Below are positions 30,075 to 61,658 of a stretch of DNA of 64,000 bases, piece after piece (positions within the stretch are counted from its first letter, which is position 1; every line of letters begins with the position of its first letter). This DNA is from Glycera tridactyla (taxonomy: Eukaryota): the NCBI GenBank assembly GCA_965644265.1, contig OZ286468.1:76074001-76138000 (forward strand), in the 5' to 3' direction. The notes beneath the pieces were generated by a model. The model had not been told where the DNA came from and did not search any database. It worked only from the letters and a program-made list of their open reading frames with translations. The translations under genes and the position numbers were made by a program.

Positions 30075-30140
30075 GTTTGTTGATTGATGTGCACTGTTTA
30101 TAGTATACATATATATACACACACGGCGTTATGCTTGTAG

Positions 30141-35821: not shown

Positions 35822-36589
35822 GTTGCTCTCTATCTTTCTACGCTCTCCGCAGCAATCAAGTATCTGTTTGTTGGGGTCCCACGCAATCTATTTCAGTCGA
35901 GCGATCCACACACCTCTATCTGTAACACATTTATATACACACACGCACTCAGACATCATGTGGGGTGAGATGTGCTACCTATCTCCGTGGTGCTATTGCT
36001 TTGCAACTTTATCCTCTTTCATCATAAGCTGCCCACAAGACATGCCGCCTTATAGGAATGCGGAGACGTTATCTGCTGACATAGTTTATGTTGGTGGAAT
36101 TGCTATCAACTATGACACAACTACGAGTGAGTATGAGGGAGGGCGTATGTACACGTTTGTTTGTTATATCCACCTGCTTCTGGAATGCACTCCAACTCAT
36201 AAATGTTCGCTGGGGTGTCTCTACAGTTGAGCTCAGTGGGCTGGTCGCGGGAGGGCGTTTGTAATATTATATTTATCAACGTGATAGAGCCAGAGAGATG
36301 GTGACCCAACCCCCCTCCCCCCTATTCGTGGTTGGTTAACATTGTGTGTGTGTGTGTGTGTTTGACGTAGCTTGGTATAGCGCGCGCCGCCACGATATCG
36401 AATGAGCAGATGTTGTCAATTAGTACTGTACATCGTTCAAGTCCCCCCTTCCATGAAACAGTCAATATATATTTTGTGTCCGAGGTCGTTGCTGATCAAC
36501 AGTTTGACAGTTGTAGGCACAAATGTGGAGCGGCACGCCTGGATGATACCCCAAGTGGTGCGCTCAGTTGTTTGATTCCGGATGTATGT

Positions 36590-36995
36590 TCACCACCACC
36601 ACCTGCACCACCACCACAATCTGCACCACCACCTGCACCACCACCACACACCATCACCTGCACCATCACCACAATCTGCCCCACCGCCACACACCATCAC
36701 CTGCACCACCACCATCAGCTGCACCACTACTGCCACCTGTACCACCACCACAATCTGTACCACACATCATCACCTGCACCACCACCACCACCCGCACCAC
36801 CACCACAACCCGCACCACCACCACAATCTGCACCATCACCACACACCATCACCTGCACCACCACCACACACCATCACCTGCACCACCACCACACACCATC
36901 ACCTACACCACCATCACCTGCACCACTACCACCTGCACCACCACCACACGCCATCACCACCACCACATACCATCACCTGCGCCACCACCAACTTG
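36590..36995. repeat. (CAC)-rich low-complexity tract built from CACCACCAC(A/C)/CACCTGCAC units
   Basis: Seen directly; it generates the His/Thr/Pro-rich ORFs in all three + frames. Confidence 0.92.
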
Positions 36996-37974
36996 CGATT
37001 CTCGCGCAGTATGAGACATCCTATCCATTCTTATGGCGGATTTGCTCATTTGTTAGTACGTCTATCCGTCTTTTCACAGATTTAACCTGCTCCCACGTCT
37101 CACTGTAGCAACACCTCGATTTTGCAGTGATCGTAGTTTTTTGTTTGTTTGTGTAATTGACTCCGCATGAGAATAATCTCTGTGTTATGTGTTGCCGCGG
37201 TTCGAACCGGCAGCAGGCTCGAGAGAACAATGAGGTGTCGGGCGGTTATGCGCAATGAAAGCGCCCATTCAGATTTACCAATTACCGAATCTTTTGTCAC
37301 TTCACAACGGGCAGCTGGATTTGTTATGTCGCGCATTCCGTTGCACCGCAGTGGGAGGGAACGAGTCTCATACATTCGATGAATTACGCATGTTTGTGAT
37401 TTTAGATCGGGCGAACAATGGAAGGCTCGGATAAACGTACGCGAAGCTTGATCTCGGTCATTGTATTCTCGAGTTGGACACCTGGATCTCATATGTCGCG
37501 ACATTCCACTTTCGCCGTTTCTTCCATACATACATTCATCCAGGCTCGCGTCGGCAAACACCCACCCTACTCCGTTGTTTATTACGGATATTGCGCAATT
37601 CCCACCCAGATACACCCATGTCCGTTTGTATGTCTGTCCATCCAGCTGGGTAACGGTCGGCCTGTTTGTGTGTCCGAGTGAGTTGATACTGGAACGTATG
37701 TCCATCTGCACTCGTGCCTGACCGAACATTTACGCCCGTTTGTATGTCAGCTTGTCCGACCAAACTTCGTTATATCGCTTTGTACTTCCGACCGGATCAT
37801 CCGCTCCCCATTATTGATTTGTGTGCTATATTGAGTGGTCGCGCTAGTAATATTAATAGAAGGTTCCAGTAACGGTGATGCCACAATGCCTCAGTCCGAT
37901 CACCACGGCTCGACACAAATACCAGGATTCGCAGGGAATGCCGAGCCGGGGGTCCAATATTGTCGGGTGCGGGA

Positions 37975-39110: not shown

Positions 39111-39335
39111 CATCGTCGTCGCGACGTGAGGTAGCCATTGTCCCACCACACCCGCTAGCGGAGCCCCCCCCCCCCGTCCGATCCATCAATCGCACAAGGT
39201 GGTCATTATCACATCGCACGGCGGATGGAGCATCCAATCATATAACCCACTCACGGATTCGATCGGCAATTCGTTTTATAGAACTCGTCGTCTAATCACA
39301 TGTACATCGATCATTCTTTTAAATTGTATTTCTTG

Positions 39336-42300
39336 TGTAATCCTTCCAATATGACAATGGAATTAAACCAGTCATCCGACAGGCTTGTAGGAGTATTCCC
39401 TCCTCTTCCTTAAGATGCAACCTTGGCAAGAAGTTTATATCTGATTAAATTACCATTATCAAGAACAGCAGGAAGCAATGTATAGGTTAACCGGGCTTTT
39501 ACCCCATTTATCCCAATGTCAAAATAAATGGCATTGCTCCTGTGGATCGATGTTCACAAAAATATATACGTTGTACTAAAAGATGTTAAAATGCGCGATC
39601 AGTATTACATGTTGAATCCCATTGTTTGCCAGCTCTAATGAAACCATAAATCTATAAAGACATCTCATCTATCACACAGGGAACTCAATTGTTGGTTCAA
39701 AAGTATAAGATGACACATAAATAGAGTTGTAGATACATATTTTAATTTGTATAAAGTTCACATAGTAGGTAGGTTGTAAATGATAGATCATAATTTGAAT
39801 GAAGCAATATAGATTATCACAGTATCAAGTAGACAAAAAGTCAGTTATACTCATGATGAAATAAATAAATTCATTTCAAATATTCAGATCTGAATTATAT
39901 ACATATATGACAAATATGGATGAACTCGTGTTACATAAATACCAGTGATACATCAGAATTATTCAACTCACGACATACTCATACACAGGATATTCATGGC
40001 CGAATGACAAAGTGAGGTACCTCAATGAGTTATACAAGTACACACTCAAATAGTCACAAGATTGAGCTCAAACCCTTTTATAGTACTATCTTCTTTCTTG
40101 TTCCATCGTTGACTTGGGCGCTTGAGAAGTGGCCACTGCAGCTAGCTAGAAATATAAACAAAGTCAGAGACACTGTGTCTAGATAGTTAGTGCACTTTAG
40201 ATATATGACTTTAAAAGTTTGGGTTAAAGACCCACGATGCAAGATCGACTTTAAAAGTTAATATAGTGGTGGCCACCTAGTTGCACATGTGATGACGAAC
40301 TTTGGTTATATATCCATATCAGCTAGAGAATGATGGTAGCTGATACTAGAACGTGTATCATAGATGGAAGTAGAAGTAAAGAGGAGACATCATTCCTCTC
40401 GAGTGAAGTAGCTTATCTCGTAAAGATAGCTAACAGCATCTCACCGTGTGAAGAGATTATGTCCTACACATTTCCCATGTGTATAGTGCGTTTAACACAC
40501 TAAAGAATATGTAGACGACGACTAGGCATATCCGCCTATATTAGTAGATTCCCATAAGCCCGGGAGGCGACGTGGGAATGGAGTGGCCTGAAGAGTACGC
40601 ACCTCTTCAATTTACGACATCTCAGACGCGTTGGTCGCTGCAAGAAGATAAAAAAAAGTCTCCTACCAACTTGTCCAAGTATCATAAAGAAAAGTTTTAA
40701 TTCAAAAAGTATCTTTAAACAACTCTAAGTTTTTATTTATGTTTGTTGCGTGCACTTAGTTACTTGCAGTTGCCAGATCTATTATAGTGGGAAAGCAGGA
40801 TCCCACTCTATTCCCCACTAACTAAATAGCATAAGAATTTAACTTACAAGTTACCATTGATCAAGTTACTAGAAATATTTCAACATTCAGTTGAAGAGAT
40901 TGTCAAAAGACAATCAGCAAGTATCACCGTTGAAAAGAAATCTCAATGCACTTAAGCCATTATCAACGGAGCAGGCACTGAGCCAACTAAGTTAATCTAT
41001 CAATGAACAAGGCATTAAAATATCATCAGCTGTATCAGAGAGAGCTAAGTTCACGGGAAAATGAACTAGAAAGGTGAACACACCAAGTCCTCTCTCAGTC
41101 AGCTGGGATCATGATGCAGCAGCAATACAGCGAAAAAGTTGAAGTCCAACTGTCTGCATGAAAAGAGCAAGCACGCTTTTCAAAATCAAAAATAGTTAAG
41201 TCCTCATCAAATCAAATTCAAAAATTTGAATAAATTCTAAATTAAGAATCCGAGATAGAGAAATCAATCTATTCAGAACAGGTGGTCTTTGTAGACAGTA
41301 TCAGATAGAGTCACCACTCACCGAAGCAAGAGGCAAGATCTGAAATCAACCCAAGTTCCCCCTCCCTTACACTGCGAGTATGACCTACCTAACATAGACC
41401 GGAACGCACTAAGTCACAGCTGCAACAGCAGCGGGGTCTAAGTTCCGATCTACCAAGTCCGTGCTAAGTTCGAATTCTAAAATTCACCAAATCCCAATTT
41501 CAACTCCTTTCAAGCCATTTGGTAATGTCTAAAGTCGAAATTAGTCATGTAATTCCAGAAATATAAGAGCGAAATGCATTTACATGCAGTCCCATATGTC
41601 ACAAACCTCAAACACAAATGTGCTTACTAGGTAAGACCATGAGTAAGTCCGGTAAGCACCGTGCTGAGTTTCAGTCAACGCGCTAAGTTCGCGCTGTCAA
41701 ATCACAAATAGCGCTAAAGCCAGCACACTGAAGTTCTATAAAAGCAATCCGCACATAACGAGAAACAATTCCGATCAATTCTAAAGCATCTAAAAGCTTT
41801 TATCCAAAAGTGAAAAAGTTTCAAACTTGTTGAAAAGTGTAAAGTGGATCGGAAGCTCAAAGTGAGGCTCATACATGTGGCGGATGGAAATCCAAAATGG
41901 CGGATTGTTTACATCTGACCGATCAGTCAGAAACAGCTGTTCATTCCAGAACGCTCAGAAAGTATCTCGGAGCTCAAATGACAGCGCATAGCAGCTTATT
42001 CATTACGAGAGCTAAACAATTACCAATATAGCCGTTTGAAGGTCTAAAATCAATCCAAAAGAATTTTCCTTCGAAAATACAGCCTAACGTGATGTCGCAG
42101 ATCATATAGACCAAAAATCTCAAGGTGGTCACATGTGACAGGTTGGTCTCAATACGGAGGTTCCCTAAAAAAAGTAGGTCACGGGATTTAGGGACATCAC
42201 ACAAGACTAAGCAAGCTTAGGACGGGTCCGTGCTTAGGATATACAGCGCTTAGGACAGAAATCAAGCTTATCAGAGTGGACCTTCTCCGAAAAAGTCTAA

Positions 42301-44508
42301 ATTCAGGCCGGGCACATGAATCACAAGCAGACACTACGTGTAAACAAAACAAGCCTCGGTTTGTCGTCTCCCCTACATGTCTATTACAAGTACGAGCACC
42401 AAAAACATTCCACCGGATCTTCAATTGACAAATACGACAGTTGTGGTCATAGAAATTGAAATACCATCAAACTAGCACTTGATCGTTTATAAACAAGCTT
42501 TTTGCAAGCCGAAATAAATTCAGAAAACTGAAATTGAAGCATATTTGATCGGTCAATTAATCGATTAATCGATCGGTTAACCGTCAAAGAATTCCAGATT
42601 TTCACACCATATGAACGACATTAGATTATTACCTTCTCAAAACAAGCCGTTTCAATGAAAATACGTTTTTCAATAAAGAATTTCACTCGGAAAAGAAAAG
42701 ATTGACTGGATCTCTATTCATATGATCAGGGAGCTAAAGAAAACAGATCAGCTGTGTGTGCTATTTACGAAACCAGCAGCAGAGTTCACCTTAGCGGTGA
42801 CCTGGTTAGTACACATGACAGCGAGCTGCCATTGTCATACCGAGATAGGCATGTTCATTTCAACTCAGCCCACATGGACTGGTAGAGTAGCCGGGTCTAA
42901 AAACACACAGATTCAGAGAGAAAAGACACAGTCGTCTCTGCTGATATTTCAACTGAAAATGATCTTACAGAAATATTCCTTTCACAATATTATTCCTATA
43001 GAGAAATCCCGTGAATATAATTGAATTTTGAATGATTCAATCATCTAATTCACACAGAAATCCGATATATTACACAAATGATCAGAATCTGATCGGTAGG
43101 AGCTATATTGAGACGTGTTAGCAGTTCATACACACAGCTTCTCTCACCCGGAGGATTCAGTGAGTCCAAGCGTTAAATACTATATTACAAATTCCTGCAT
43201 AGCCCTGTTCCACCCAAACAGGCGTACTGCACCGGGAACAACGCAGGAGGAACACGGCATAGTTCCACGCAGTTCCACTTGTTCCAAAATCACCGGAACA
43301 GCACAGGGAATTAACAGAAACAGATAGAACTACCAATATCCGCGAGAATTATCAGCTAGTTGTTTGGATCAGGACGGCATTTATGGAACAAAATCCTATC
43401 ATCCAAAATGATCCAAAATCATCCAAAAACATGCAAATTCTAGATTTTGACCACGTATGCTCGAAAGATGGTACATTCAATACAAAACACGGAAGATCCG
43501 ATGACATGAAATGGCATGATACTAAAAATGGCCATTTGGGCAATTGGGGAAAATGACTCCTAATAAAGCCTCCTAAAAGGATCCTAAAACATTTCTAAAT
43601 CTCATGAACACTTACTGGATGTAGTAGAGCTCAGGATGATGTAGTGGAGTCCATTGTTTCTATTCCAGTGCAGCGATACTGGAGAAGCAAGATGTTCTCT
43701 GCTCCCGACTCCCTCAGCTCCGGTGCGTACTCTTCAGGACAGAATTTCCAAGTGCCAGAACTCCTGTCTGGAATACTTTTATGTATCCGTCCTGAAGAGC
43801 CAGCAAAGAGCGGGAAAAAAGAGCGGGAGAAGCGATGTCAAGCTCCCCGAGTCAGCTACCTCGAAAGTATTCGCTCGAGACTTTTCTAGATCAATTACAG
43901 AAGATTTTCTGAGAAAACATGTACATTGCATGTACATTGCAGATCACTTTCCTCCTGCGCGACTCCGAGCTCCTCCTGCTCAGGGAGTCATTCACTATAC
44001 TGTGTGATCAACTATGTTGGCAAAAAACCGTCCGATAAACGGCCTATCCCACGGACTAACAAATTTGCCTCAAAAGATACAATTCCCATCTTCGGGATAT
44101 CTTTAGCCCTAATACAGATACGTATCGTGTAAAAATATGGTCTTCCTACGTCCATTATTCATGAAGATATCGCATTTCTACTGTTTCACCCTAGAAACAC
44201 TGCAAGCTGGGCACCCACCGCGAACGGCGATTCCACTGCGTGTAACTCGAACTCTAGTTGCCACACCAACAACCAGATAGGTGAAACAACGAATATTAGA
44301 AAACTAACAGGATTTCTACTGTTTTTCAACTAATAGAAGTGAAACTATCTCATGCTTCTGAAGTAGGAAGGAATAATTATCAATCTAGTAGCGTAAAAAT
44401 AGTGCCGCGGGCCTCAAAAGAGGAATTCCGCGAATTCCGCTACCAGAAATCCCTATATTGTTCATGTTATTCTAACAAACGTCACATGTTCAAAAACGTG
44501 GCGTTACA
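39336..44508 (-). repeat. 3' LTR (5173 bp)
   Basis: Colinear with 52681-57853 at a constant offset of 13345; nine substitutions found by eye. Confidence 0.97.
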
Positions 44509-44732
44509 TGCTCCCGGGGGTATAAATGTTTGTGCTGCAACCAAACATTGCGAAACCAAACAAGACAAAAATATGTGTCCCACACTTATTGCCTATAACA
44601 TTAACAAGAACAATATATGGAACACAACCCTATTCTCAAAAATAAATCTTACCATCTAAAAACTTATCTTCAAAAATAATAATATAACTAATTCAAGGTC
44701 CTTTCCCAAGCAGAATTTTGGATCTACTGGAG

Positions 44733-45472
44733 CACTTGTATCCTTCGGGCTCTAAAGGAGCGCACCCTAGGCTAGATACCTTTCCAGCTTAGTAGCCGAC
44801 TAAGCCCTCCCTGCTTCTCAGAGACTACTTTTCATAATCTCCGATCACAGAGAGCACAGCTCGCAAAAGCTAACTGTGGCCTGACTGTACATTGAGCCAT
44901 CTTGAGAACAAAACCGGAAACTCAAGATGACCGGCTGGTGACCCAGTCGATAGCGATCAGGACATCTTGGTCACCCAAGAGCCCAACCGACGGTCTGATC
45001 CACTGTGGGTTCATGCCACCCGATGTTAGCTGAGCAGTAAACTTTGACCGTTTTCACCAGCCTTGCCTGTCACATACATACAGAACTAAAACTATAATGT
45101 ATGCGAGGTGTAGGTCGTCACCTACGTACCACACACAACCACTTATCAACATCGCAGATCATTTCTCGGGCATAGAAAAAGTTATCAAATGACAATACCA
45201 TAACTATACTTTAGTAGGTAAGTCATGGACTCCTTTTACATGTCATTTGAAGTGAAACCATTTTCCAGCAAAACAACCTACAACATCAACAGATCGGCCA
45301 ATGTGTCGACTAGACGGTACCACAGTACTATGTTAATACACAGTTCGTTAGACACGTGGGCCTTCAGTTTCTCCCAAGCACTATATCCACAAGTTTAACG
45401 TGCCCCCGGATCCTCACGGATCCACTGCCGCCTGTTCTAGGCACTCCTATAAGGAGCCTATCCCTCTTGAGT
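44733..45472 (-). ncRNA. Group I-like self-splicing intron A (740 nt, no ORF) in the retrotransposon 3' UTR
   Basis: Boundaries CUAGGU|ACUC...CAAGUG|CUCC. Guide GCCUAG (+ strand 45437-45442) pairs with the exon hexamer with a terminal U-G. Covarying hairpins and a P4/P6/P7-like core are shared with copy B. Confidence 0.75.
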
Positions 45473-47876
45473 ACCTAGGTGGAAAGCTTATTTACAATTC
45501 CATGAGAAGCAAAGGATCCTAAACCTCCAGAATAGGTCCCGCTGATCTAGTTTGTCTGTCTCCTTTCAACAGCCAGGAGATATATCCACCGTATCTATCT
45601 GGAGGTTTTCTCACCCTTTCCGGTTTTCTACGGGCGATTCCAGGTGGTGAAGCATTCACTACTTCAGTCTCTTCAGACAATGGTGAATCTGACGCAGAAT
45701 GATATTCTGTGTCAGGATTCAGATCAGACTCAGTATCTTCGTCATGAGCGTCAATCTCATCAGAATTCTCAAGAAGAGGATTTTGGGCCTCTTCAATATC
45801 AATTCCAGCTTCCACAACACTGGTTTCTGACTGAGATCTAGCTGGGGTGGACTCTAAATCCTCACCTAAATGTTGGTCTACATTTGGCTGAATTTGTCCT
45901 GGTTCAGCATGTTCAGGATGATCGGATTCAATTTGAGCTGTTGGAGACAAATCACTAGCAGATGGAGTTGTTACCACTACATATTCTTCGTCCTCAAATG
46001 AATCAGAATCACAGCCCTCAGAGCTATCTTCCAATTGACCTTTTTGTTCTGAAGCACGGGTTCGGTATCGAGATTTTTGGCCAGGTTGTATAACTGTACC
46101 AGCATCTTTACTCACCGTGTCTTCAGCAAAGAGCTGAACTATATCCTCACTTATACCCTTTTCATCTAGAACCACATGAGTTTTCAAATATTTTCTATCA
46201 AAATCTTCAATAGATTTTAACATATCAATATGTAAAACTCTGTGAGGTTTTCTTGGCCTAGACAAATTCTTTAACTCATATACTCTGTTCTCGTTATCTG
46301 CCAATCTTACGACTTCATAAACTTCGGGCAACCAGGTTGGGGCTAGCTTGTGCATCCCTTTGATACCAACGTTCTTAACAAGAACTTTGTCACCAACTTT
46401 GAGTATACACGATTTAACTTTTTCATCATATCTATACTTGTTAGACATGTGAGAAAAGTCTTGACTCTGGCTAGCAATGGTTTGGACAAATTCCAACCTA
46501 GACTTCAAAGCTTCTACGTATTGTTTGAGATTATCATATTTCCTATCCTCAGGATAAGTTCCTAACATGACATCTACTGGTAGACGACTCTTCCTTCCAA
46601 ATATAAGTTCGAAAGGTGAGAACTTGGTGGAGGAGTGGATTGAGCTATTATATATGTTGGTTAAATGCCCTAAATATTTACTCCAAGAGCAAATTTTCTG
46701 TGTGGACATTGTGCCAACCATGTCAATCAAGGTACGATTGAATCTTTCGCAAATGGCATCACTCCTAGGTGAATACGGGCAAGTAAACACCTTTTTGATA
46801 CCAAGTAAATGACAAAGTTGGTCAATTACTTGCGATTCAAAATTTCTGCCTCTGTCAGATAAGAGCTTTTCAGGCAAGCCAAAGATGTCAAAAACTTTCT
46901 CTACCAGAGCTTTAGCGACCGTGGTGGCGGTCTCATTCTTGGTGGGTATAGCAAAAGCATATTTGCTAAACACATCAGTTACAATCAACACATGGCCAAA
47001 TCCATGTTTATCCATATCCAAGGATAGATAATCCATGGATAGGACTTGGAAAGGTCGTTGAGCTGCAACTTCACCTAACATGCCTTGTTTAGAGGGAGAA
47101 GTCTTTTTCAATAGACACTCTTTGCAAGCAGAGATATATTCTGTGATAGCTTTAACATGTCCAGAAAGATAAAATCTTCTCTGGAAAAATTTGACTACCC
47201 TCTCTACTCCAAAATGGCTCATCATTCAGAGCATGTAAAACTTGGGGCAAACACTTGTGGGGCAAAATAATCAAAAGGTATTCAAATCCTTCGATTTCAG
47301 TTCTTTTGCACAATACCCCTTCTGAATTAAAAACTAACCTATCTCGGAAGTAGAAAAGCTTCCTATATTTCTTTGGAAAGTCTTTAGGCTTACAAGGTCG
47401 CCGTTTGTACATGTATTGAATCACTAGATTCAAATCAGAGTCCTTGAGTTGTTCAGTTCTCCAGTCAAAAGACTGGGAGTCACTTGAGACACCAAAACTT
47501 GACGCGTCTAAATTACCTACATTTACATTTTCAATCAATGGAGTGGTTTCTGAAGACAGCTCCGAAGAGTGCTCAACCACTTGATCAGGTGTCTCATGTA
47601 GTCTAGACAATACATCAGCGTCGACATTGACCGGTCCAGGCTTGTAATGTATGGTGAAATCATAGTCTCCAAGGGCAGCAAGCCATCTCTGAGATGTAGC
47701 ATCAACCTTGAGAGATCTATGTATATACGTGAGAGGGTTATTATCAGTGTATACCTTAAATGGGTGGCCATATAAATAAAAGTTAAATTTATCGACTACA
47801 GCCCACTTGAGCCCAAGAAACTCAAGTTTGTATACAGGATAATTTTTCTCAGTATCTTTAAGAGATCTAGAAGCAT

Positions 47877-48657
47877 CACTTGTATCCTTCGGGCTCTTCC
47901 AAAAAAGCGCACCCTAGGCTGGATACCTCTCCGACCTAGCGGCCCATCCAAGGACGCCAACTAGGCCCTCTCTGCTTCCCAAAGACTACTTTTCATAGCC
48001 TCGATCACAGAGAGCACAGCTCGCACAATTGCTTACTGTGGCCTGACTGTACATTGAGCCATCTTGAGCATCAAAGTCTTCAAGATGACCGGCTGGTGAC
48101 CCAGTCGATAGCGATCAGGACATCTTGGTCACCCAAGAGCCCAACCGACGGTCTGATCCACTGTGGGTTCATGCCACCCAATGGAAACTGAGCAGTGAAC
48201 TTTGACCGTTTTCACCAGCCTTGCCTGTCACATACACCTTACCAAAATTGGACTCATAGAGTTCAAGGATGCATGCTAGGTGTGGACGGTAATCCACGTA
48301 CCACATGTGACCACTTATCTCAGTAGACTAACCAATACCATCCGTGAGCAAGTTATCAGACGCAATACCAATAACTAGACTGCAAAAATCTTAATTCACA
48401 GCCAGCCTGGACCAATTTTACATGCCATCTGAATAAGCCAACCTTACTCACGGAGGACAGTCTACCCAACGGACAGCCCGATCAACATGCCGACTAGACG
48501 GTACCAGAGTACTGTGTCAATTCACAGTTCGTAAGACACGGGGATCTTCAGTATCATCCCAGCACTATATCCTGGAGTTTAACGTGCCCCTAGACCTTTG
48601 CAGGTCCACTCCCGCCTGTTTTTGCCACCCTTTATGAGGAGCCTATCCCTCTTCAGT
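47877..48657 (-). ncRNA. Group I-like self-splicing intron B (781 nt, no ORF) in the RNase H coding region
   Basis: Boundaries UUUGCU|ACUG...CAAGUG|AUGC. Removal restores TGC TAT GCT TCT AGA (C-Y-A-S-R). Guide GGCAAA (+ strand 48621-48626) pairs with the exon hexamer with a terminal U-G. Confidence 0.8.
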
Positions 48658-50811
48658 AGCAAACAGGATGCAACAGATTCTTGTCACCAAATTGCAACAA
48701 AACAGCCCCCAGTCCTGTGGTACAAGCATCTACATGCAAAATAAAAGGTTTCTCTAAATCTGGGAATGCTAACACCGGGGGATGGGTGAGTAGTTCAATC
48801 AGCTTCTCACGAGCTTCTTGACATTCCTCGTCCCAATCTTCTACCACAGAGTGCTGTAAAGCAGGCTGTTTCACAGGAGGTCCAAACTTACTTTTGGGCT
48901 TATACTTGACCCCTTTTAAAAGACGTAACAAAGGTTGAGCTATACTGCTATAGTGAGGGATATGCCTCCTAAAAAATCCAGCAAATCCTAAGAAACTCAT
49001 GACATCTTTTACTGTTCTGATAACAGGCCAATCCTGTAAAACTTTAGTTTTTTCAGGATTGCACATCACACCTTTATCAGAGATGATATAGCCAAGATAA
49101 ACTATCTCCTGGGACGCCAAGGTACACTTGCCAGGGTGTATCTTGAGACCAGCTTCACGCATAAGAGTGAGAGCTCTGGACAAAAGTTCCAGATGTTCCT
49201 CCATAGTGCGGCTAAAAATAATGACATCATCAAGAAAACAAATACATCCCTCATAAAGCATTGGTCTGAGGATGTTCTCCATGCAACGTTGAAAAGTTGC
49301 AGCAGAAGTCTTAGCCCCCTGAACCATGCGATTGTATTCATACAATCCAAAAGGTGTAGAGAAAGCAGTCTTCTCTTTATCCCTCTCCTCGATTTCGATA
49401 TTATAGTACCCGGATCTTATATCCATTTTGGTAAAAAAAGTATTACCAGCCAGGTAGGGTAAAATATCGTCAAAACGAGGGAGAGCATAACAGTCCCTCA
49501 CTGTTTTATCATTGAGATGTCTTAAATCAGTCACCATCCTAACTCTCCCATCTGGTTTTTGCAAAAAAATAGGAGCACTAGAATAAGGAGACACTGAAGG
49601 TCGTATGATACCTTTCTCCAGTAACTGATTTAAATGATCTTTAGCAGCAGCATACATCTTTGGAGGTAGATTTCTGTGTCTGACCTTAAACGGAATATCG
49701 TCTGACAAATTGTACCCATGTTTCACACCCTCTACTTTTCCAATATCATAGTCTGACTTAGAGAAAGTAGCTAGATTATCTTGAAGACAAGCTTCAAGAC
49801 TTTCCTTCTCTAGATCAGACAAATGGGATAAACTATCTACATGGTCCCACAGAAGTTTAATATCAGGTGATATTTCTTCTTCCTCATCCTCTCCTAGTGT
49901 AGTTTTAAACTGGTCGACATCGTCAACCCCCTCAAACTCAGAAAGGTTTAGTCGAGTAGCATGCACTCTGACATCATCCGAGGCTAATTCAAAAGGTATA
50001 GTTGAAAGTGATACTACACCAAAATCATTTCCTTTGCAGACAGTATAAACAGTAGAAGAAGTATTATGTACAGGCACATGAACTGTTGACAAGGAAGCTA
50101 AATTAGCATCAAGCACAACTGGAGTCTTCATCAAAAAGTCATTGTTTGGTTCAATCAAAATTGCCGCATTTATGCCTACTAATTTAGATCGAAATTTTAA
50201 TTTAACAATTGATGTTTGACCTGGAAGAATGGATATATCTTGTGCCACTTTGGCACTACCCAAAAATCCGTTTGAAATGCTTTCAGCTTGTTGAACCTTG
50301 ACGAAAGAATTATATACAACATCTAAAATAGAACTATGTGACGGATGTTGGCAGTTATTTAAATACCAGAATTTCTCAATGGCATTCATGCCTACAAGAC
50401 ACATATGGTTCTGAAAAGTGAAATCAAAACCACAATTGTCTTTCAGCACTAAAAATAATACATGTGTGCCTTCATTAGTTCCGGACAATCTCTTGCCCAT
50501 TGTCACAAAAAGTTCCACAGCTCCAACATATTGTAGGGCTTCCCCATTAACTTGATTCACTCTCAACAATGAAGACACAGGTTGTAGCGGAACATAAGAA
50601 AAATATTTCCGATACAGTCCTTCATTTATGAGTGAAACTTGACTTCCAGTGTCAATTAATGAAGAAATAACAGCTCCATTCAATAAAATGTTATGAATGT
50701 TTTGCTTGCCAACTAAAAACGGTGGTAGAGTAAATAAGCTTGAAACATGTACATCAATGGGTGGACCAGCATCATCTCCGGAGAAAGAATGGTCCAGTTC
50801 TTTCTCTGGGA

Positions 50812-52215
50812 TTAGTTTCCCTGCTGATTCTGAGAGGCTAAATAAGCTGCTCGTTGCTGACGCATGCGAGAAAACATCTTGCTTTCATCCCAATCTATAG
50901 AACAAGTCTTAGCTACATGGCCTTTCTCCCCACAATTATAACATATAGCTTTCTCTAACCATTTAGGTTTCCACTAGGGTTTCACACCATCATGTGAAAA
51001 CAGAGGTTTCTCAGTGGCAGCACTAGCTGCAGCTACGACTGGAGTTTTGCCAGATAGTTGTAAACTCTTCGGGTTCTGAACTACTTGGTCTATCTGACCG
51101 GACAATTTCTTAGAAGCAGATCTAATGTCATACAAAATGTCACTATGTACAGGAGTAGATTTGATGGAAGGGTTGGAAATGGCTAAAGCAGCTAAACTAG
51201 TTTCTTCCTCAACAGAATTAACATAATCTAAAAAAGATAGGTTAATTGAAGAAACAGAAGCTGTCTTCTTGTTTCTCATACACCTCCTCTTGCGCTCCTT
51301 ACTTTCCCTCTCAAAAGCTTGCAACTGAGTACTAAAATCTTGGTACCCAGGATATTTGTCAAGGTCTTTGAGTTTGAACTCAGAAGTGATCATAAAGTGA
51401 TCAGTGGACTGTAACCCTCTAAGAAAATAATGTATTAGAGACTGGTTCACATCAGCAAAATACTTAGGATCTACTCTCACCATTTCTGATATAATATCAT
51501 CTATCCTAGACAAGAAATCAGATGGAGATTCAGTGACTTCCTGAATACAGTCCATCAGCCTATCGACTAGATGGGAAATACTGTCTGAAGCACCATAAGT
51601 GATCGCTATCTTATTCACTAAGGCAGCACTGGTCTCTATTGCCCTAGCAGCTCTCAAAGCTTTCCCTGTTAAACTGAGTCGCAATGTTTTCAGTTTCTCC
51701 TTCTCGGAAATATCGGCATCGTTCATGACATGTTCATTGGCCAACAACAGCCATTCTTCCACCGTACATTCCCCAGAGCCAGGTTTGTCCCTACCCGAGA
51801 ACTTCTTCAAACCTCAATAATGAGCAGTAGCTTCAGGTTTGGGTGATCGTGGTGTTGTGGGTGCAGGTGGTGTCTGAACAATGGTAGTTGAAATGATTGC
51901 ATCCTTTCGAAGCTGTTCGACAAAAGAGACATGATAAGCATCATTTCCTAGAATGATACAATCATTGTCATCTAACACGTCACAATTCTTATCGAAGGCT
52001 ACATGATCTCGCGAGTGGATCAACAAACAATTGCAAGGTTCAGCCACAGTGTCATAGATAAGAAAAAGGTCAAAATCTACGAATATAGTCCCTACCAACT
52101 TGGTGGTAGCAGCTTTCCAATCTGGATCAGCAGCTACAGGCACTGGGTACCTTTCAATCACCATGCAATAATAAGGGGGAATATTCAACCTTTTGCAAGC
52201 CACGTCAGGATCCAT
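50812..52215 (-). pseudogene. gag: gag (PNMA-like capsid with C-terminal CCHC zinc knuckle), two in-frame stops
   Basis: One frame from 52215 to TAA at 50812. It contains Y*GLKKFSG (TGA at 51814-51816), EEWL...EKEKLKTLRLSLTGKAL, TAG at 50974-50976, then CYNCGEKGHVAKTC. Confidence 0.92.
50815..50821 (-). promoter_or_regulatory. -1 ribosomal frameshift slippery site G GGA AAC at the gag-pol junction
   Basis: An X XXY YYZ heptamer sits immediately before the gag TAA. The -1 frame is open (GKLIPEKELD...) into the protease LIDTGSQVS. Confidence 0.85.
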
Positions 52216-52660
52216 GTTGACGTTGCAAGATATATGGCACTACCCTAAATAGAGAATATAAATTCACAAAAAGAAAAGGGTATTAATTCTGTGTAAAGTA
52301 AAATGATTAATACATATGCAACACTCAGGCTAAATTCCGTATCTGAAACAAAGTTTTGGATTAATCTGGTATAAACCAGTGGCACCAAATCGCACTATTA
52401 ATACAGAATAAGTTGACACATACCAATTCAGCCAGTCCAGTATAGCATACAAGTCATCACTACTCAAATCCAGATAAAGATATAATGCATATAGAAGATG
52501 TAAATGAATAGATTAATACATGTCTGTAAACAAAAACATGCATCTACAAGTCATACAATTGTACCACAAATAAGACCACTGTATGATATAGTGAGATGAA
52601 ATTTGATCAATTAAATTTCAAAAACATCATGGCTGGGCAAATCAGACATCAACAAATCTG

Positions 52661-52678
52661 ATCCCGGACGAGCCCCCA
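52661..52678 (-). promoter_or_regulatory. Primer-binding site for tRNA-Pro
   Basis: The - strand reads TGGGGGCTCGTCCGGGAT, the 18-nt complement of the tRNA-Pro 3' end (same as the MuLV PBS), 2 nt from the LTR. Confidence 0.95.
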
Positions 52679-52680
52679 TG

Positions 52681-55600
52681 TGTAATCCTTCCAATATGAC
52701 AATGGAATTAAACCAGTCATCCGACAGGCTTGTAGGAGTATTCCCTCCTCTTCCTTAAGATGCAACCTTGGCAAGAAGTTTATATCTGATTAAATTACCA
52801 TTATCAAGAACAGCAGGAAGCAATGTATAGGTTAACCGGGCTTTTACCCCATTTATCCCAATGTCAAAATGAATGGCATTGCTCCTGTGGATCGATGTTC
52901 ACAAAAATATATACGTTGTACTAAAAGATGTTAAAATGCGCGATCAGTATTACATGTTGAATCCCATTGTTTGCCAGCTCTAATGAAACCATAAATCTAT
53001 AAAGACATCTCATCTATCACACAGGGAACTCAATTGTTGGTTCAAAAGTATAAGATGACACATAAATAGAGTTGTAGATACATATTTTAATTTGTATAAA
53101 GTTCACATAGTAGGTAGGTTGTAAATGATAGATCATAATTTGAATGAAGCAATATAGATTATCACAGTATCAAGTAGACAAAAAGTCAGTTATACTCATG
53201 ATGAAATAAATAAATTCATTTCAAATATTCAGATCTGAATCATATACATATATGACAAATATGGATGAACTCGTGTTACATAAATACCAGTGATACATCA
53301 GAATTATTCAACTCACGACATACTCATACACAGGATATTCATGGCCGAATGACAAAGTGAGGTACCTCAATGAGTTATACAAGTACACACTCAAATAGTC
53401 ACAAGATTGAGCTCAAACCCTTTTATAGTACTATCTTCTTTCTTGTTCCATCGTTGACTTGGGCGCTTGAGAAGTGGCCACTGCAGCTAGCTAGAAATAT
53501 AAACAAAGTCAAAGACACTGTGTCTAGATAGTTAGTGCACTTTAGATATATGACTTTAAAAGTTTGGGTTAAAGACCCACGATGCAAGATCGACTTTAAA
53601 AGTTAATATAGTGGTGGCCACCTAGTTGCACATGCGATGACGAACTTTGGTTATATATCCATATCAGCTAGAGAATGATGGTAGCTGATACTAGAACGTG
53701 TATCATAGATGGAAGTAGAAGTAAAGAGGAGACATCATTCCTCTCGAGTGAAGTAGCTTATCTCGTAAAGATAGCTAACAGCATCTCACCGTGTGAAGAG
53801 ATTATGTCCTACACATTTCCCATGTGTATAGTGCGTTTAACACACTAAAGAATATGTAGACGACGACTAGGCATATCCGCCTATATTAGTAGATTCCCAT
53901 AAGCCCGGGAGGCGACGTGGGAATGGAGTGGCCTGAAGAGTACGCACCTCTTCAATTTACGACATCTCAGACGCGTTGGTCGCTGCAAGAAGATAAAAAA
54001 AAGTCTCCTACCAACTTGTCCAAGTATCATAAAGAAAAGTTTTAATTCAAAAAGTATCTTTAAACAACTCTAAGTTTTTATTTATGTTTGTTGCGTGCAC
54101 TTAGTTACTTGCAGTTGCCAGATCTATTATAGTGGGAAAGCAGGATCCCACTCTATTCCCCACTAACTAAATAGCATAAGAATTTAACTTACAAGTTACC
54201 ATTGATCAAGTTACTAGAAATATTTCAACATTCAGTTGAAGAGATTGTCAAAAGACAATCAGCAAGTATCACCGTTGAAAAGAAATCTCAATGCACTTAA
54301 GCCATTATCAACGGAGCAGGCACTGAGCCAACTAAGTTAATCTATCAATGAACAAGGCATTAAAATATCATCAGCTGTATCAGAGAGAGCTAAGTTCACG
54401 GGAAAATGAACTAGAAAGGTGAACACACCAAGTCCTCTCTCAGTCAGCTGGGATCATGATGCAGCAGCAATACAGCGAAAAAGTTGAAGTCCAACTGTCT
54501 GCATGAAAAGAGCAAGCACGCTTTTCAAAATCAAAAATAGTTAAGTCCTCATCAAATCAAATTCAAAAATTTGAATAAATTCTAAATTAAGAATCCGAGA
54601 TAGAGAAATCAATCTATTCAGAACAGGTGGTCTTTGTAGACAGTATCAGATAGAGTCACCACTCACCGAAGCAAGAGGCAAGATCTGAAATCAACCCAAG
54701 TTCCCCCTCCCTTACACTGCGAGTATGACCTACCTAACATAGACCGGAACGCACTAAGTCACAGCTGCAACAGCAGCGGGGTCTAAGTTCCGATCTACCA
54801 AGTCCGTGCTAAGTTCGAATTCTAAAATTCACCAAATCCCAATTTCAACTCCTTTCAAGCCATTTGGTAATGTCTAAAGTCGAAATTAGTCATGTAATTC
54901 CAGAAATATAAGAGCGAAATGCATTTACATGCAGTCCCATATGTCACAAACCTCAAACACAAATGTGCTTACTAGGTAAGACCATGAGTAAGTCCGGTAA
55001 GCACCGTGCTGAGTTTCAGTCAACGCGCTAAGTTCGCGCTGTCAAATCACAAATAGCGCTAAAGCCAGCACACTGAAGTTCTATAAAAGCAATCCGCACA
55101 TAACGAGAAACAATTCCGATCAATTCTAAAGCATCTAAAAGCTTTTATCCAAAAGTGAAAAAGTTTCAAACTTGTTGAAAAGTGTAAAGTGGATCGGAAG
55201 CTCAAAGTGAGGCTCATACATGTGGCGGATGGAAATCCAAAATGGCGGATTGTTTACATCTGACCGATCAGTCAGAAACAGCTGTTCATTCCAGAACGCT
55301 CAGAAAGTATCTCGGAGCTCAAATGACAGCGCATAGCAGCTTATTCATTACGAGAGCTATACAATTACAAATATAGCCGTTTGAAGGTCTAAAATCAATC
55401 CAAAAGAATTTTCCTTCGAAAATACAGCCTAACGTGATGTCGCAGATCATATAGACCAAAAATCTCAAGGTGGTCACATGTGACAGGTTGGTCTCAATAC
55501 GGAGGTTCCCTAAAAAAAGTAGGTCACGGGATTTAGGGACATCACACAAGACTAAGCAAGCTTAGGACGGGTCCGTGCTTAGGATATACAGCGCTTAGGA

Positions 55601-57853
55601 CAGAAATCAAGCTTATCAGAGTGGACCTTCTCCGAAAAAGTCTAAATTCAGGCCGGGCACATGAATCACAAGCAGACACTACGTGTAAACAAAACAAGCC
55701 TCGGTTTGTCGTCTCCCCTACATGTCTATTACAAGTACGAGCACCAAAAACATTCCACCGGATCTTCAATTGACAAATACGACAGTTGTGGTCATAGAAA
55801 TTGAAATACCATCAAACTAGCACTTGATCGTTTATAAACAAGCTTTTTGCAAGCCGAAATAAATTCAGAAAACTGAAATTGAAGCATATTTGATCGGTCG
55901 ATTAATCGATTAATCGATCGGTTAACCGTCAAAGAATTCCAGATTTTCACACCATATGAACGACGTTAGATTATTACCTTCTCAAAACAAGCCGTTTCAA
56001 TGAAAATACGTTTTTCAATAAAGAATTTCACTCGGAAAAGAAAAGATTGACTGGATCTCTATTCATATGATCAGGGAGCTAAAGAAAACAGATCAGCTGT
56101 GTGTGCTATTTACGAAACCAGCAGCAGAGTTCACCTTAGCGGTGACCTGGTTAGTACACATGACAGCGAGCTGCCATTGTCATACCGAGATAGGCATGTT
56201 CATTTCAACTCAGCCCACATGGACTGGTAGAGTAGCCGGGTCTAAAAACACACAGATTCAGAGAGAAAAGACACAGTCGTCTCTGCTGATATTTCAACTG
56301 AAAATGATCTTACAGAAATATTCCTTTCACAATATTATTCCTATAGAGAAATCCCGTGAATATAATTGAATTTTGAATGATTCAATCATCTAATTCACAC
56401 AGAAATCCGATATATTACACAAATGATCAGAATCTGATCGGTAGGAGCTATATTGAGACGTGTTAGCAGTTCATACACACAGCTTCTCTCACCCGGAGGA
56501 TTCAGTGAGTCCAAGCGTTAAATACTATATTACAAATTCCTGCATAGCCCTGTTCCACCCAAACAGGCGTACTGCACCGGGAACAACGCAGGAGGAACAC
56601 GGCATAGTTCCACGCAGTTCCACTTGTTCCAAAATCACCGGAACAGCACAGGGAATTAACAGAAACAGATAGAACTACCAATATCCGCGAGAATTATCAG
56701 CTAGTTGTTTGGATCAGGACGGCATTTATGGAACAAAATCCTATCATCCAAAATGATCCAAAATCATCCAAAAACATGCAAATTCTAGATTTTGACCACG
56801 TATGCTCGAAAGATGGTACATTCAATACAAAACACGGAAGATCCGATGACATGAAATGGCATGATACTAAAAATGGCCATTTGGGCAATTGGGGAAAATG
56901 ACTCCTAATAAAGCCTCCTAAAAGGATCCTAAAACATTTCTAAATCTCATGAACACTTACTGGATGTAGTAGAGCTCAGGATGATGTAGTGGAGTCCATT
57001 GTTTCTATTCCAGTGCAGCGATACTGGAGAAGCAAGATGTTCTCTGCTCCCGACTCCCTCAGCTCCGGTGCGTACTCTTCAGGACAGAATTTCCAAGTGC
57101 CAGAACTCCTGTCTGGAATACTTTTATGTATCCGTCCTGAAGAGCCAGCAAAGAGCGGGAAAAAAGAGCGGGAGAAGCGATGTCAAGCTCCCCGAGTCAG
57201 CTACCTCGAAAGTATTCGCTCGAGACTTTTCTAGATCAATTACAGAAGATTTTCTGAGAAAACATGTACATTGCATGTACATTGCAGATCACTTTCCTCC
57301 TGCGCGACTCCGAGCTCCTCCTGCTCAGGGAGTCATTCACTATACTGTGTGATCAACTATGTTGGCAAAAAACCGTCCGATAAACGGCCTATCCCACGGA
57401 CTAACAAATTTGCCTCAAAAGATACAATTCCCATCTTCGGGATATCTTTAGCCCTAATACAGATACGTATCGTGTAAAAATATGGTCTTCCTACGTCCAT
57501 TATTCATGAAGATATCGCATTTCTACTGTTTCACCCTAGAAACACTGCAAGCTGGGCACCCACCGCGAACGGCGATTCCACTGCGTGTAACTCGAACTCT
57601 AGTTGCCACACCAACAACCAGATAGGTGAAACAACGAATATTAGAAAACTAACAGGATTTCTACTGTTTTTCAACTAATAGAAGTGAAACTATCTCATGC
57701 TTCTGAAGTAGGAAGGAATAATTATCAATCTAGTAGCGTAAAAATAGTGCCGCGGGCCTCAAAAGAGGAATTCCGCGAATTCCGCTACCAGAAATCCCTA
57801 TATTGTTCATGTTATTCTAACAAACGTCGCATGTTCAAAAACGTGGCGTTACA
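52681..57853 (-). repeat. 5' LTR (5173 bp)
   Basis: Followed on the - strand by CA and then the PBS. Confidence 0.97.
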
Positions 57854-59074
57854 CTTGCGCAACACAGATCAATGTTATGAGAGACCAACCCCCCCCCCCC
57901 CCCTTTAAACCGGACGTTACTCTCACGCACCACAAACACTAGGGTCCCCCCCCCTGATCAATATTCGCGGTAATGGAGTCGACGAGATGCGGTATCACAA
58001 GCTGACCGCTTACGCGAGCAACGTGATTAGCGACAAATTGCGTGTTAACCCGATCCCCACCCATATTGCGGAACCTGCCGTTTATTTATGTTTTATTCAT
58101 ACGCATATACTCGCATTCCGGCCGCCGTTGTAGGGTTTCTATTTCTGCGCATATTACTCATGTCGCGCGAAGGACAACCGCCGCCTCATATCCCATGCGT
58201 ATTCACATCCCGGTCGTCCGAATATTTTATATCTCATATATATCGCAAGCGTGCAAAGGACGGTCGACGCCGTACATATCCATACGCCCGCTTTCTGATC
58301 GGCGTCCGTAGCTGTTTTTTTTTGCTTATGTTTATATTCATATCTCACAAGCGAGAGAGAAACGAGCGGCAATGTCGCTCCGACAGGGAGACCTTTTCCA
58401 CGAAGGCCCAAATTCTGTGCCTGCACCGCGTCCTCCGCGAGGCGAGGCGAGAGTGCGTCCCAGGACATCCAAAGGGGGCCGACGGAAGTCGTATCGCGGC
58501 AAGACGAGCCGAAGCCCAGATTTGGTGCCTGTATCGTGTCCTATTGCGAGGAGCCTCCACGAGGGGGCGAACCCAATCTAGAGCGCTGTATCATTATTGG
58601 ACGGCATCGTATTATATCGCCGTATTATATATATATAACGATTGAACGGTCGATGAATATCTAATGTCCTCTCGACACCGAATCGGTCATTCCGGACACG
58701 TATATATATATATGTGTAAACAGACCATCGTCTTGTTATCGCGAAGAAAGGAGGCGGGAAGAAGAAGGCCGCAATCGATAGCCGTCCGTCCGACCACCGG
58801 ACAGGGACAGCGCTTGATCGAATGTACGACGGGAGAATAGTCCGCTGCGGAGGACACGCTGAAAGCCGTGATGAAAGTTGTCGACGCGCGACAGCTACGA
58901 CCTCTCAGGGGGATAATCTGGAATCCGCGATGCGAGAGTCGTCCGCGAGGGCGGACACGAAGAAGAAGGAGGAGGACACTCCGGTCGGTTTGCGGCGGGC
59001 GCCTTGCGCCGACGTCCGGATCCGGACGCCGGGGCGCCCCCCCTTCCGGCCCGGGGGGATGCACCCAATCCTTT

Positions 59075-59544
59075 CTACAGCCCCCGCACCACGGACATCG
59101 CCGATCGGACGTCTTCCAGCGCCCCGAGGTCCCGTCCCTCCAGCCGGAGGACCAGGAAGGCGAGGCAGTAGTCGCCGCAGAACCCGTTCGCCCCCTCGGC
59201 GGCGGCGGCCGAGAGGGGAACGGGACCTCCAGGCGGTCGCAGTTCGCGCGGGCAAATTGCTCCAGCTCGGCGTCGCCGTAGTCGCCGGGCCGGAGTCCGG
59301 CCAGGTCGAAGAACCGGCCAGCCCCCGTCCCGGCGGGAAACAGGAAGCAGACCCAGTGACCTCCCCTCCTGACGGCGGACCGGTTGACGTTCACCACGTA
59401 CGCCGCCGGTCGATCGCCCGGTCTCAGCGCGGGCAGGAGCCGGAGCTCGTCGCGGGCCGCGACGACCCCGGTCCTCAGCCGCTCGGCGAAGGGTGGCGAC
59501 GATGACAGGACCCCCCTGATCTGGCCGGATGAACAGTAGCACAT
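59075..59544 (-). pseudogene. Adenain-like cysteine protease (Polinton PRO), frameshifted at ~59195
   Basis: AYVVN...GGHWV (His) and FFD (Asp) lie in one frame; FCGDYC (Cys) lies in the adjacent frame. Confidence 0.85.
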
Positions 59545-59955
59545 TTTTTTTTTCTTCCCCGCTGACAAATATATATATATATATACCGCTAATCACAAAC
59601 ACAAGCTATACGTAAATAATGCCTCCCCCCCTCCCCCTCGGCCGGCGATGCCGGCCGCGTCTCCGACCCGCACCGATCCCCGTTTTCCCTCCAGCCCGAT
59701 CCGTATGCCGGTAACAAACACTAGGTGCTGACAACAATAGTGATTCCGCCGCTAAAGAAAAAAAAAGCACAATCAGTATACAGGTAACACTCAGCCCCCC
59801 CCACCCGGCAACAAATACCCGCAAACAGCGGCGACGATGACAATATTATATAAGCATAAAATATGCAGTCCAACAACTGGGCGGGTGCGTCCCCGGACGC
59901 CGGGAAGCGTGACGCTAGTCCGGATAAATGCAATAACTGGCGGGGAAACGTGACG

Positions 59956-61308: not shown

Positions 61309-61317
61309 GCTGCTTCA

Positions 61318-61650: not shown

Positions 61651-61658
61651 GATAATGT

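What the first reader, a model, noticed from the sequence alone, without database searches (positions are those of the whole stretch)
47877..48657. Intron B gates RNase H and integrase expression
Seen: the insert splits the Tyr codon of the conserved HPV(A/C)YASRSL RNase H motif (T|AT). Unspliced RNA hits TGA right after entering the insert; precise removal gives an open frame through KLEFLGLKW, TDNNPL and ADVLSR. P1 extends with ACU/GGU, and a partial P10 is possible (AAGGGU with 3' exon AUGCUU, 5 of 6 pairs). Inference: spliced RNA is needed for full Pol, but reverse-transcribing spliced RNA deletes the intron, so intron retention implies unspliced genomes are packaged. That makes a splicing-rate switch between translation and packaging.
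Basis: partly seen in the sequence, partly recalled or inferred. Interest (0 to 1): 0.88.

Follow-up and report, generated by a model that had tools for sequence, protein, structure and literature searches.

The report
Guide-carrying intron family inside retrotransposons
The 781-base insert that interrupts the RNase H gene of a jumping gene carries an internal guide that pairs with the sequence just upstream of it and ends in an invariant G, as self-splicing group I introns do, and it belongs to a widespread, apparently undescribed family living inside retrotransposon genes.

Summary
A 781-bp non-coding insert (47877-48657, minus strand) splits the RNase H domain of a young 18.5-kb Ty3/gypsy-type LTR retrotransposon with no residue lost or gained. 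It is not an ordinary nested transposon. A second copy, 75% identical, lies in the element's 3' UTR. A 21-mer from the insert core retrieves 58 metagenome contigs with homologues. Across 24 distinct junctions, six bases about 30 nt inside the insert are complementary to that copy's own upstream flank, with G opposite the last flank base, usually U (0 of 100,000 permutations match this). All 41 distinct 3' ends stop at an invariant G. Copies next to a recognisable pol gene always lie in its sense, at many different pol sites. About 35 helices are predicted, most with covariation. One relative, more distant than the closest uninterrupted one, carries the insert at the same RNase H site, followed by an intact 791-aa ORF; three other relatives lack it. 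These are group I-type hallmarks (P1 with internal guide, terminal G). However, no Rfam model matches, the catalytic core could not be assigned, and P10 is unsupported. Splicing itself, and the proposed translation/packaging switch, remain inference. The host copy has other defects.

The parts
39334..57853 (-). Whole Ty3/gypsy-type LTR retrotransposon (18.5 kb) that hosts both insert copies
   Evidence: Two 5175-bp direct repeats with TG...CA ends and 9 mismatches flank gag-PR-RT-RNaseH-IN. No clear target-site duplication was seen.
52679..57853 (-). 5' LTR
39334..44508 (-). 3' LTR
52661..52678 (-). Primer-binding-site-like 18-mer directly inside the 5' LTR (starts TGG on the minus strand)
   Evidence: Read. 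Which tRNA it matches was not tested; no tRNA gene lies in the window.
50974..52215 (-). gag (PNMA-type capsid domain), broken once by an in-frame stop
45519..50884 (-). pol (protease, RT, RNase H, integrase). It is interrupted by the intron-type insert and broken by one frameshift. Its frame does not overlap the gag frame.
47877..48657 (-). Insert copy 1 (the finding): a 781-nt non-coding structured RNA element inside the RNase H domain
48621..48626 (-). Internal guide of copy 1 (insert nt 32-37). It pairs 6/6 with the last six flank bases (48658-48663), with G.U at the junction. The helix extends to 10 bp with a 2-nt bulge.
48492..48657 (-). 5' domain of copy 1 (P1 hairpin plus a branched domain)
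   Evidence: Covariance model R1 scores 163 bits. Family covariation supports the structure.
48013..48231 (-). Most conserved core of copy 1. It includes a 100-nt run identical to copy 2 (48080-48179) and the 21-mer at 48038-48058 that is shared exactly with 58 contigs.
47877..47929 (-). 3' terminal domain of copy 1, ending in the invariant G at 47877
   Evidence: Model R2 scores 58.5 bits. The last base is G in 41/41 distinct ends.
44733..45472 (-). Insert copy 2: 740 nt, same orientation, lying in the 3' UTR between the pol stop and the 3' LTR. Its guide at 45437-45442 pairs 6/6 with its own flank.

Best explanation
The insert belongs to a previously unrecognised family of large (657-997 nt in the 13 distinct complete copies measured), ORF-less, highly structured introns that live in the transcripts of retrotransposons. 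They mostly sit in Ty3/gypsy pol genes and UTRs. Each copy carries an internal guide about 30 nt from its 5' end. The guide pairs with the last six bases of the upstream exon, with a G.U wobble at the junction (a group I-type P1), and each copy ends in an invariant G. What follows is inferred, not shown. The RNA is removed from a fraction of transcripts by group I-type, probably autocatalytic, splicing, and this gives the contiguous RNase H-integrase reading frame. Unspliced RNA stops translation just inside the insert. Unspliced RNA is also the form that is reverse-transcribed, which is why the insert persists in DNA copies. New sites are colonised when an excised intron reverse-splices into a retroelement RNA at a site matching its guide and the element's own reverse transcriptase and integrase fix it in DNA. 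Copying of spliced RNA gives intron-less lineages. I favour the hitch-hiker, with regulation as a side effect.
For: 1. The split of RNase H is clean, and uninterrupted relatives are collinear across it.
2. The guide and the flank are complementary at homologous columns. Copy 1 and copy 2 each pair 6/6 with their own flank, although their guides differ at 3 of 6 positions.
3. The same holds across 24 distinct junctions: 14 pair 6/6 and 20 pair at least 5/6, against 4% and 23% for mismatched guide/flank combinations, and 0 of 100,000 permutations reach the observed mean.
4. The guide's first base is always G. The flank base at -1 is U in 17 of the 19 junctions that align cleanly, and C in the other 2 (my reading).
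5. The guide columns are the most variable stretch of an otherwise conserved 5' domain.
6. The 3' end is an invariant G in 41/41 distinct copies, and conservation stops exactly there.
7. The RNA structure is conserved. In the 5' domain 96.3% of pairs are canonical, and 32/42 pairs change on both sides, against 13 in shuffles and 5-8 in slid controls. About 35 helices are predicted over the whole length, most more than 90% canonical with several covariations.
8. Every copy on a contig with detectable pol homology lies in the sense of pol, and the copies sit at different sites: before PR, in the RT-RNase H linker, in RNase H, in the IN core, and in the 3' UTR.
9. L003 is a more distant relative than L001 in the integrase region (60% against 72% amino-acid identity there; 60% against 64% in the RNase H-linker piece). 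It has the insert at the same RNase H site, followed by an intact 791-aa ORF. L001, L002 and L004 lack the insert.
10. The insert is more conserved than the coding flanks: 80% nt identity against 66-71%.
11. Long open frames directly abut the insert on its own strand in several other contigs; on both sides in L035.
12. The two window copies are each other's closest relatives, yet they are 25% diverged inside an element whose LTRs differ by 0.17%.
Against: No RNA data are available, so splicing has not been observed. No Rfam family, group I included, matches either window copy or 20 family members, even at permissive E-values. I could not assign a P3-P9 core or the P3/P7 pseudoknot. The most conserved stretches are invariant, so they carry no covariation, and a core model could not be calibrated. 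P10 shows no family signal. Two junctions have C instead of U at -1, and a few divergent copies pair poorly. One copy (L010/L057) lacks its 3' part, so dead copies exist. The host copy in the window is itself defective in other ways. The contigs may come from only a few host genomes.
Confidence: 0.65

Rival explanations
1. Guided insertion without splicing. The RNA is a parasite that enters retroelement RNAs by guide pairing (reverse-splicing-like) and is then carried as dead cargo. Insert-bearing copies make no full Pol and are copied only with proteins supplied by intact elements.
For: The window copy has other defects. A 3'-truncated copy sits inside an integrase gene. No splicing evidence exists. 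Non-autonomous LTR elements copied in trans are common (established knowledge).
Against: An intact 791-aa ORF follows the insert in L003, and long open frames abut inserts in other contigs. The same site is occupied in lineages that share only about 60% amino-acid identity. A ribozyme able to reverse-splice is by chemistry also able to splice (established knowledge of group I introns). The invariant 3' G and the strict junction G.U are features of the splicing reaction.
Confidence: 0.15
2. It is an intron, but not a group I ribozyme. It would be either a new class of self-splicing RNA that shares the guide logic, or an RNA that needs a host or element protein for its removal.
For: No Rfam group I hit in 22 copies. 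The size (657-997 nt without an ORF) and roughly 35 helices are large for group I. No P10. No core assignment.
Against: Among known classes, a P1 with an internal guide close to the 5' end, G.U at the splice site and a terminal G are jointly specific to group I introns (established knowledge). Group I introns are diverse, and a single general model misses many of them.
Confidence: 0.14
3. A DNA transposon that leaves no target-site duplication (Helitron-like) landed in RNase H and simply killed pol.
For: There is no target-site duplication. Read on the plus strand, copy 1 sits between A and T and starts with TC.
Against: The 3' end is not CTRR and has no typical terminal hairpin. Copy 2 lacks the TC start. 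The strict sense orientation, the guide/flank pairing with a G.U wobble and the covariation along the full length are RNA-level properties that a DNA transposon does not need.
Confidence: 0.03
4. A one-off internal duplication: reverse-transcriptase template switching copied the element's own 3'-UTR module into RNase H.
For: The only two copies in the window lie in one element, in the same orientation.
Against: Template switching would not give a base-exact insertion, nor a guide retuned to the new flank. The family occurs at many sites in many different elements. L003 has it at the same site.
Confidence: 0.03

Closest known systems
Group I introns, especially nuclear rDNA group I introns thought to spread by reverse splicing (PMC1299323)
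   Same: The 5' exon end pairs with an internal guide near the intron's 5' end. There is a G.U wobble at the splice site, a terminal G, no target duplication and a strictly sense orientation. Guide sequences differ between insertion sites. The proposed route to new sites is reverse splicing into RNA followed by reverse transcription.
   Different: The host is a Pol II-type retrotransposon gene, not rDNA, an organelle gene or a phage or giant-virus gene. No Rfam group I model matches. No P10 is seen and the core is unassigned. It is large for an ORF-less group I intron. Here the reverse transcriptase and integrase needed for fixation are supplied by the host gene itself.
Spliceosomal splicing in LTR retrotransposons (BARE1, copia, Ogre, CRR; PMC3735527)
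   Same: An intron within or between retrotransposon ORFs changes which proteins a transcript can make. Spliced RNA must be kept out of replication for the intron to persist.
   Different: Those introns have GT-AG-type borders and use the spliceosome. This insert has no usable canonical borders and carries its own guide.
Ribozymes borne by retroelements: hammerheads in Penelope-like elements and retrozymes (PMC4209133, PMC5680766)
   Same: Catalytic-RNA-type motifs that travel inside eukaryotic retroelements. A hammerhead HH9-like hit lies near one family member (L005).
   Different: Those are small self-cleaving motifs (about 50-80 nt) that process transcripts. They are not introns with exon-pairing guides.
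Mobile group II introns
   Same: A ribozyme intron whose exon-binding sequences pair with the target, and whose mobility couples reverse splicing to reverse transcription.
   Different: There are no GUGYG...AY ends and no domain V or other Rfam group II hit. The guide lies at the extreme 5' end, with G.U at the junction. The reverse transcriptase is encoded by the host gene, not by the intron.

Membership tests
Group I intron | P1 helix: the end of the 5' exon pairs with an internal guide sequence near the intron's 5' end, with U.G at the splice site | tested here: met
   Both window copies pair 6/6. Across 24 distinct junctions, 14 pair 6/6 and 20 pair at least 5/6, and 0/100,000 permutations reach this. 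The guide's first base is always G. The -1 base is U in most junctions and C in two.
Group I intron | Terminal guanosine (omega G) as the last intron base | tested here: met
   For copy 1 and L003 the boundary is fixed independently by collinearity with relatives, and both end in G. The last base is G in 41/41 distinct 3' ends aligned with model R2, and the flank composition is random from +1 onwards.
Group I intron | P10: the start of the 3' exon pairs with the guide region (common, not universal) | tested here: not met
   A 5/6 pairing can be drawn for copy 1, but no alignment column shows an excess of pairing with each copy's own 3' flank across 13 copies. The same scan recovers P1 as a positive control.
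Group I intron | Conserved core P3-P9 with the P3/P7 pseudoknot and a G-binding site | tested here: inconclusive
   Many covarying helices were found, but no pseudoknot with convincing covariation. The best-conserved stretches are invariant. A core model could not be calibrated.
Group I intron | Match to the curated group I covariance model(s) of Rfam | tested here: not met
   No hit at the gathering score in the window. None at E<=10 on either copy. None at E<=1 on 20 family members.
Group I intron | Splicing started by an external guanosine | not testable with these tools
   No RNA data are available.
Group II intron | GUGYG 5' end, AY 3' end, domain V; exon-binding sites inside domain I | tested here: not met
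   The ends read ACU/ACC... and ...AAGYG. No Rfam group II hit.
Spliceosomal intron (including Ogre/BARE-type retrotransposon introns) | GT-AG, GC-AG or AT-AC borders placed so that the frame continues | tested here: not met
   None of the border positions compatible with collinearity has such dinucleotides (read).
Helitron | Insertion between A and T, 5' TC, 3' CTRR preceded by a hairpin, either orientation | tested here: not met
   The A|T site and TC start are present only for copy 1. There is no CTRR. Copies occur only in sense orientation.
Ty3/gypsy LTR retrotransposon (the host element) | LTRs with TG..CA ends, a PBS next to the 5' LTR, and the gene order gag-PR-RT-RNaseH-IN | tested here: met
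   Named relatives come from fishes, a sea anemone, mussels, a sponge and others.

The most novel reading that the evidence does not exclude
This would be a new class of self-splicing ribozyme intron, or a deeply divergent branch of group I, specialised to live in nuclear retrotransposons of probably animal hosts. It would spread by reverse splicing into retroelement RNA and be fixed in DNA by the host element's own reverse transcriptase and integrase. That would be the first natural system showing the long-proposed reverse-splicing route of intron mobility, and the first ribozyme-type introns in nuclear protein-coding genes of animals.
Probability: 0.35. Interest if true: 0.97.

Novelty: new variant of a known kind. 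Interest (0 to 1): 0.9.

Why it matters
To my knowledge, group I-type introns are known from rDNA, organelles, bacteria, phages and some giant viruses, but not from nuclear retrotransposon genes. Three searches of the held paper library found no such report.

Spread of group I introns by reverse splicing followed by reverse transcription has long been inferred from phylogeny (PMC1299323), but it lacks a natural system in which the reverse transcriptase is at hand. Here the target RNA encodes and uses that enzyme. The many guide-matched sites therefore make the hypothesis directly testable from sequence and RNA data.

The family also shows how a retroelement can hold part of Pol behind an RNA-processing step. 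It adds a large conserved structured RNA (about 35 predicted helices and a 21-mer shared exactly by 58 contigs) to the list of candidate ribozymes.

Tried and rejected
- Rfam on the window, on both copies and on 20 family members found no intron or ribozyme family. The only hit was a hammerhead near L005.
- An exact 25-mer from the core gave 0 hits in JGI metagenomes, IMG/VR and prokaryote genomes. A better-chosen 21-mer, invariant in three copies, then gave 58 metagenome contigs and none in IMG/VR or prokaryote genomes.
- blastn of the insert against the phage and plasmid collections found nothing.
- I tried to fish for spurious ORFs from other copies with an 83-aa stop-free stretch against 1.84 billion proteins. 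It gave 0 hits.
- An exact look-up of the window's integrase ORF found it is not on record.
- I considered and rejected a solo LTR, a SINE, a TIR transposon (no target-site duplication, no terminal repeats), a Helitron and a spliceosomal or U12 intron on either strand.
- A pseudoknot and group I core search by covariation was inconclusive.
- A P10 scan was negative.
- A test of clean insertion at a second site (L028) against P0001 was blurred by a lineage-specific linker segment.
- The large ORFs flanking some family members have no Pfam or PDB relatives.

Full report
**What is at the coordinates.** The region belongs to an LTR retrotransposon on the minus strand. Two 5175-bp direct repeats (39334-44508 and 52679-57853; TG...CA ends; 9 mismatches) flank an 8.2-kb internal region. 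An 18-nt primer-binding-site-like sequence lies next to the 5' LTR. Pfam finds a PNMA-type gag, then RVT_1, RT_RNaseH, Integrase_H2C2 and rve in that order. The PR-RT frame enters the insert and stops within two codons.

The upstream frame ends at RT_RNaseH profile position 35 and the downstream frame starts at position 36. In the closest uninterrupted relative (P0001, 64% identity) the flanks match residues up to 660 and from 661. The insert has no ORF.

I did not build, save or search a joined (spliced) reading. The flanks were searched apart, by reference.

**A second copy, and first hints of RNA structure.** The insert has one other copy in the window (44733-45472). It has the same orientation, is 75.6% identical, and lies between the pol stop and the 3' LTR. 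The two copies share their ends exactly. Identity is mosaic: a 100-nt identical run and a core about 97-100% identical, against 50-80% elsewhere. Both strands fold better than shuffles, with z-scores of -3.5 and -3.0. Substitutions between the copies keep predicted pairs more often than a local-shuffle null: 12 double changes keep a pair against 5.7 +/- 2.1 expected.

**The guide.** In the alignment of the two copies, insert bases 32-37 of copy 1 pair 6/6 with the last six bases of its upstream flank, with G opposite the final flank U. The homologous six bases of copy 2 differ at three positions, and they pair 6/6 with copy 2's different flank.

**Relatives.** Protein searches with the flanking ORFs found relatives only at 68% identity or less, all from metagenome assemblies. 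Named, more distant homologues are from fishes, a sea anemone, mussels, a sponge and other animals. The host is therefore probably an aquatic animal; this is an inference.

Four contigs were fetched. L001, L002 and L004 are contiguous at the RNase H site. L003 is a Tara Oceans contig that is more distant in the integrase region than L001 (60% against 72% amino-acid identity there; 60% against 64% in the RNase H-linker piece). It carries the last ~327 nt of a homologous insert that ends at exactly the same place and is followed by an intact 791-aa RNase H-integrase ORF. The insert is 80% identical between the window and L003, while the coding flanks are 66-71% identical.

**The family.** A 21-mer invariant in the three copies (48038-48058) occurs exactly in 58 JGI metagenome contigs. 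It does not occur in IMG/VR or in prokaryote genomes. blastn shows homologues that are 68-100% identical over the aligned stretches.

Wherever a contig also has detectable pol homology, the insert lies in the sense of pol: 12 contigs or copies, about 10 of them distinct. The sites differ: upstream of protease, in the RT-RNase H linker, in RNase H, in the integrase core, and in the 3' UTR. In several further contigs, long open frames on the insert's own strand abut it directly; only L035 has one on both sides.

Thirteen distinct full-length copies measure 657-997 nt.

**Statistics for P1.** Junctions were placed by a conserved anchor, not by complementarity. With this placement, 9 of 15 distinct junctions pair 6/6, against 2.4% of mismatched guide/flank combinations, and 0 of 20,000 permutations match. 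With the covariance-model alignment of 24 distinct junctions, 14 pair 6/6 and 20 pair at least 5/6, and 0 of 100,000 permutations match. The guide columns are the most variable part of a conserved 5' domain.

**Structure.** A covariance model of the 5' domain (R1) finds 34 copies. Only the two known copies are in the window. On that alignment 96.3% of cells are canonical pairs, and 32 of 42 pairs change on both sides. Shuffles give 13 and slid controls give 5-8. RNAalifold on 13 full-length copies gives about 35 helices, most more than 90% canonical with several double-sided covariations.

**The 3' end.** A model of the last ~60 nt (R2) finds 53 copies, 41 of them distinct. The last base is G in all 41, preceded by a conserved CAAG-Y. 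Base composition is random from +1 onwards, so the boundary is sharp.

**What does not fit.** No Rfam family matches any copy. P10 has no family-wide signal, although the same scan recovers P1. I could not assign a group I core or pseudoknot, and a core model could not be calibrated.

**Interpretation.** The following features are RNA-level properties:
- a guide that co-varies with the site;
- G.U at the junction;
- a terminal G;
- sense-only orientation;
- no target duplication;
- structure conserved along the full length;
- presence or absence at an identical site among related elements.

Together they match group I-type introns. They exclude a nested DNA transposon and a one-off duplication. 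Persistence at the RNase H site in lineages about 60% identical, with an intact ORF downstream in L003, argues that the downstream frame is still used, and that requires removal of the insert from some transcripts. Its persistence in DNA requires that unspliced RNA is what gets copied.

The step from there to a regulatory switch is not supported by anything I could test. Splicing by the spliceosome in BARE, copia and Ogre elements shows the general principle (PMC3735527). Reverse-splicing spread of group I introns is the closest proposed mobility route (PMC1299323).

**Limits.** No RNA evidence is available. The source organisms of the contigs are unknown. The contigs may represent few genomes. 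The window copy is itself defective. The N run at 24871-25165 was left as it is.

- While reading the ORF table early on, I noted in my reasoning the approximate place of a frameshift. It is not repeated here.
- I recalled from memory short consensus fragments of group I introns, and a likeness of the primer-binding site to that of a known virus.
Nothing joined was sent to a tool, saved or printed.

Noticed in passing
window 1-23351: Tandem or segmental repeats with an 8.1-kb period, 99-99.6% identical between neighbouring units (for example 1-11329 against 8104-19428). They contain internal arrays of short diverged repeats (near 3800-4500, 11900-12600 and 19950-20600).
   Followed up: no
window 33986-35818 (+), with neighbouring ORFs 29136-37108: An ORF with a protein-primed family-B DNA polymerase domain (Pfam DNA_pol_B_2), suggesting a Polinton/Maverick-like element fragment.
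   Followed up: partly
window 62138-62935 (-), with ORFs 58687-62177: A second, unrelated Ty3/gypsy fragment whose integrase carries a chromodomain (a chromovirus type).
   Followed up: partly
window 39334-44508 and 52679-57853: The LTRs are unusually long (5.2 kb) and have no ORF of 130 aa or more. The element's outer flanks show no obvious target-site duplication.
   Followed up: partly
L005:1328-1396 (-): A hammerhead HH9-like match (40.7 bits, E=5e-7, below the gathering score) lies about 200 nt upstream, on the same strand, of a family member. The host element there may be Penelope-like or a retrozyme.
   Followed up: no
L035:314-4703 (-), L050:2987-6328 (-), L046:265-1641 (+), L033:132-1667 (-): Long open frames (459-1114 aa) directly abut family members and have no Pfam hit. 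The three that were searched against PDB sequences (both L035 frames and L050) have no hit there either. The family may also live in genes of unknown mobile elements or hosts.
   Followed up: partly
L010 / L057 (same sequence, opposite orientation): A family member inside an integrase core domain lacks its 3' part. The sequence runs from the conserved core straight into integrase-coding sequence, so this is either a truncated copy or an unusual short form.
   Followed up: no
L017: Two core matches on opposite strands of one 2.3-kb contig, so two copies lie in inverted orientation.
   Followed up: no
L059, L025, L030, L039 against L007: Family members differ by large peripheral insertions (up to about 300 nt) at fixed places between conserved helices, as expected for expandable peripheral stem-loops of a large structured RNA.
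   Followed up: partly
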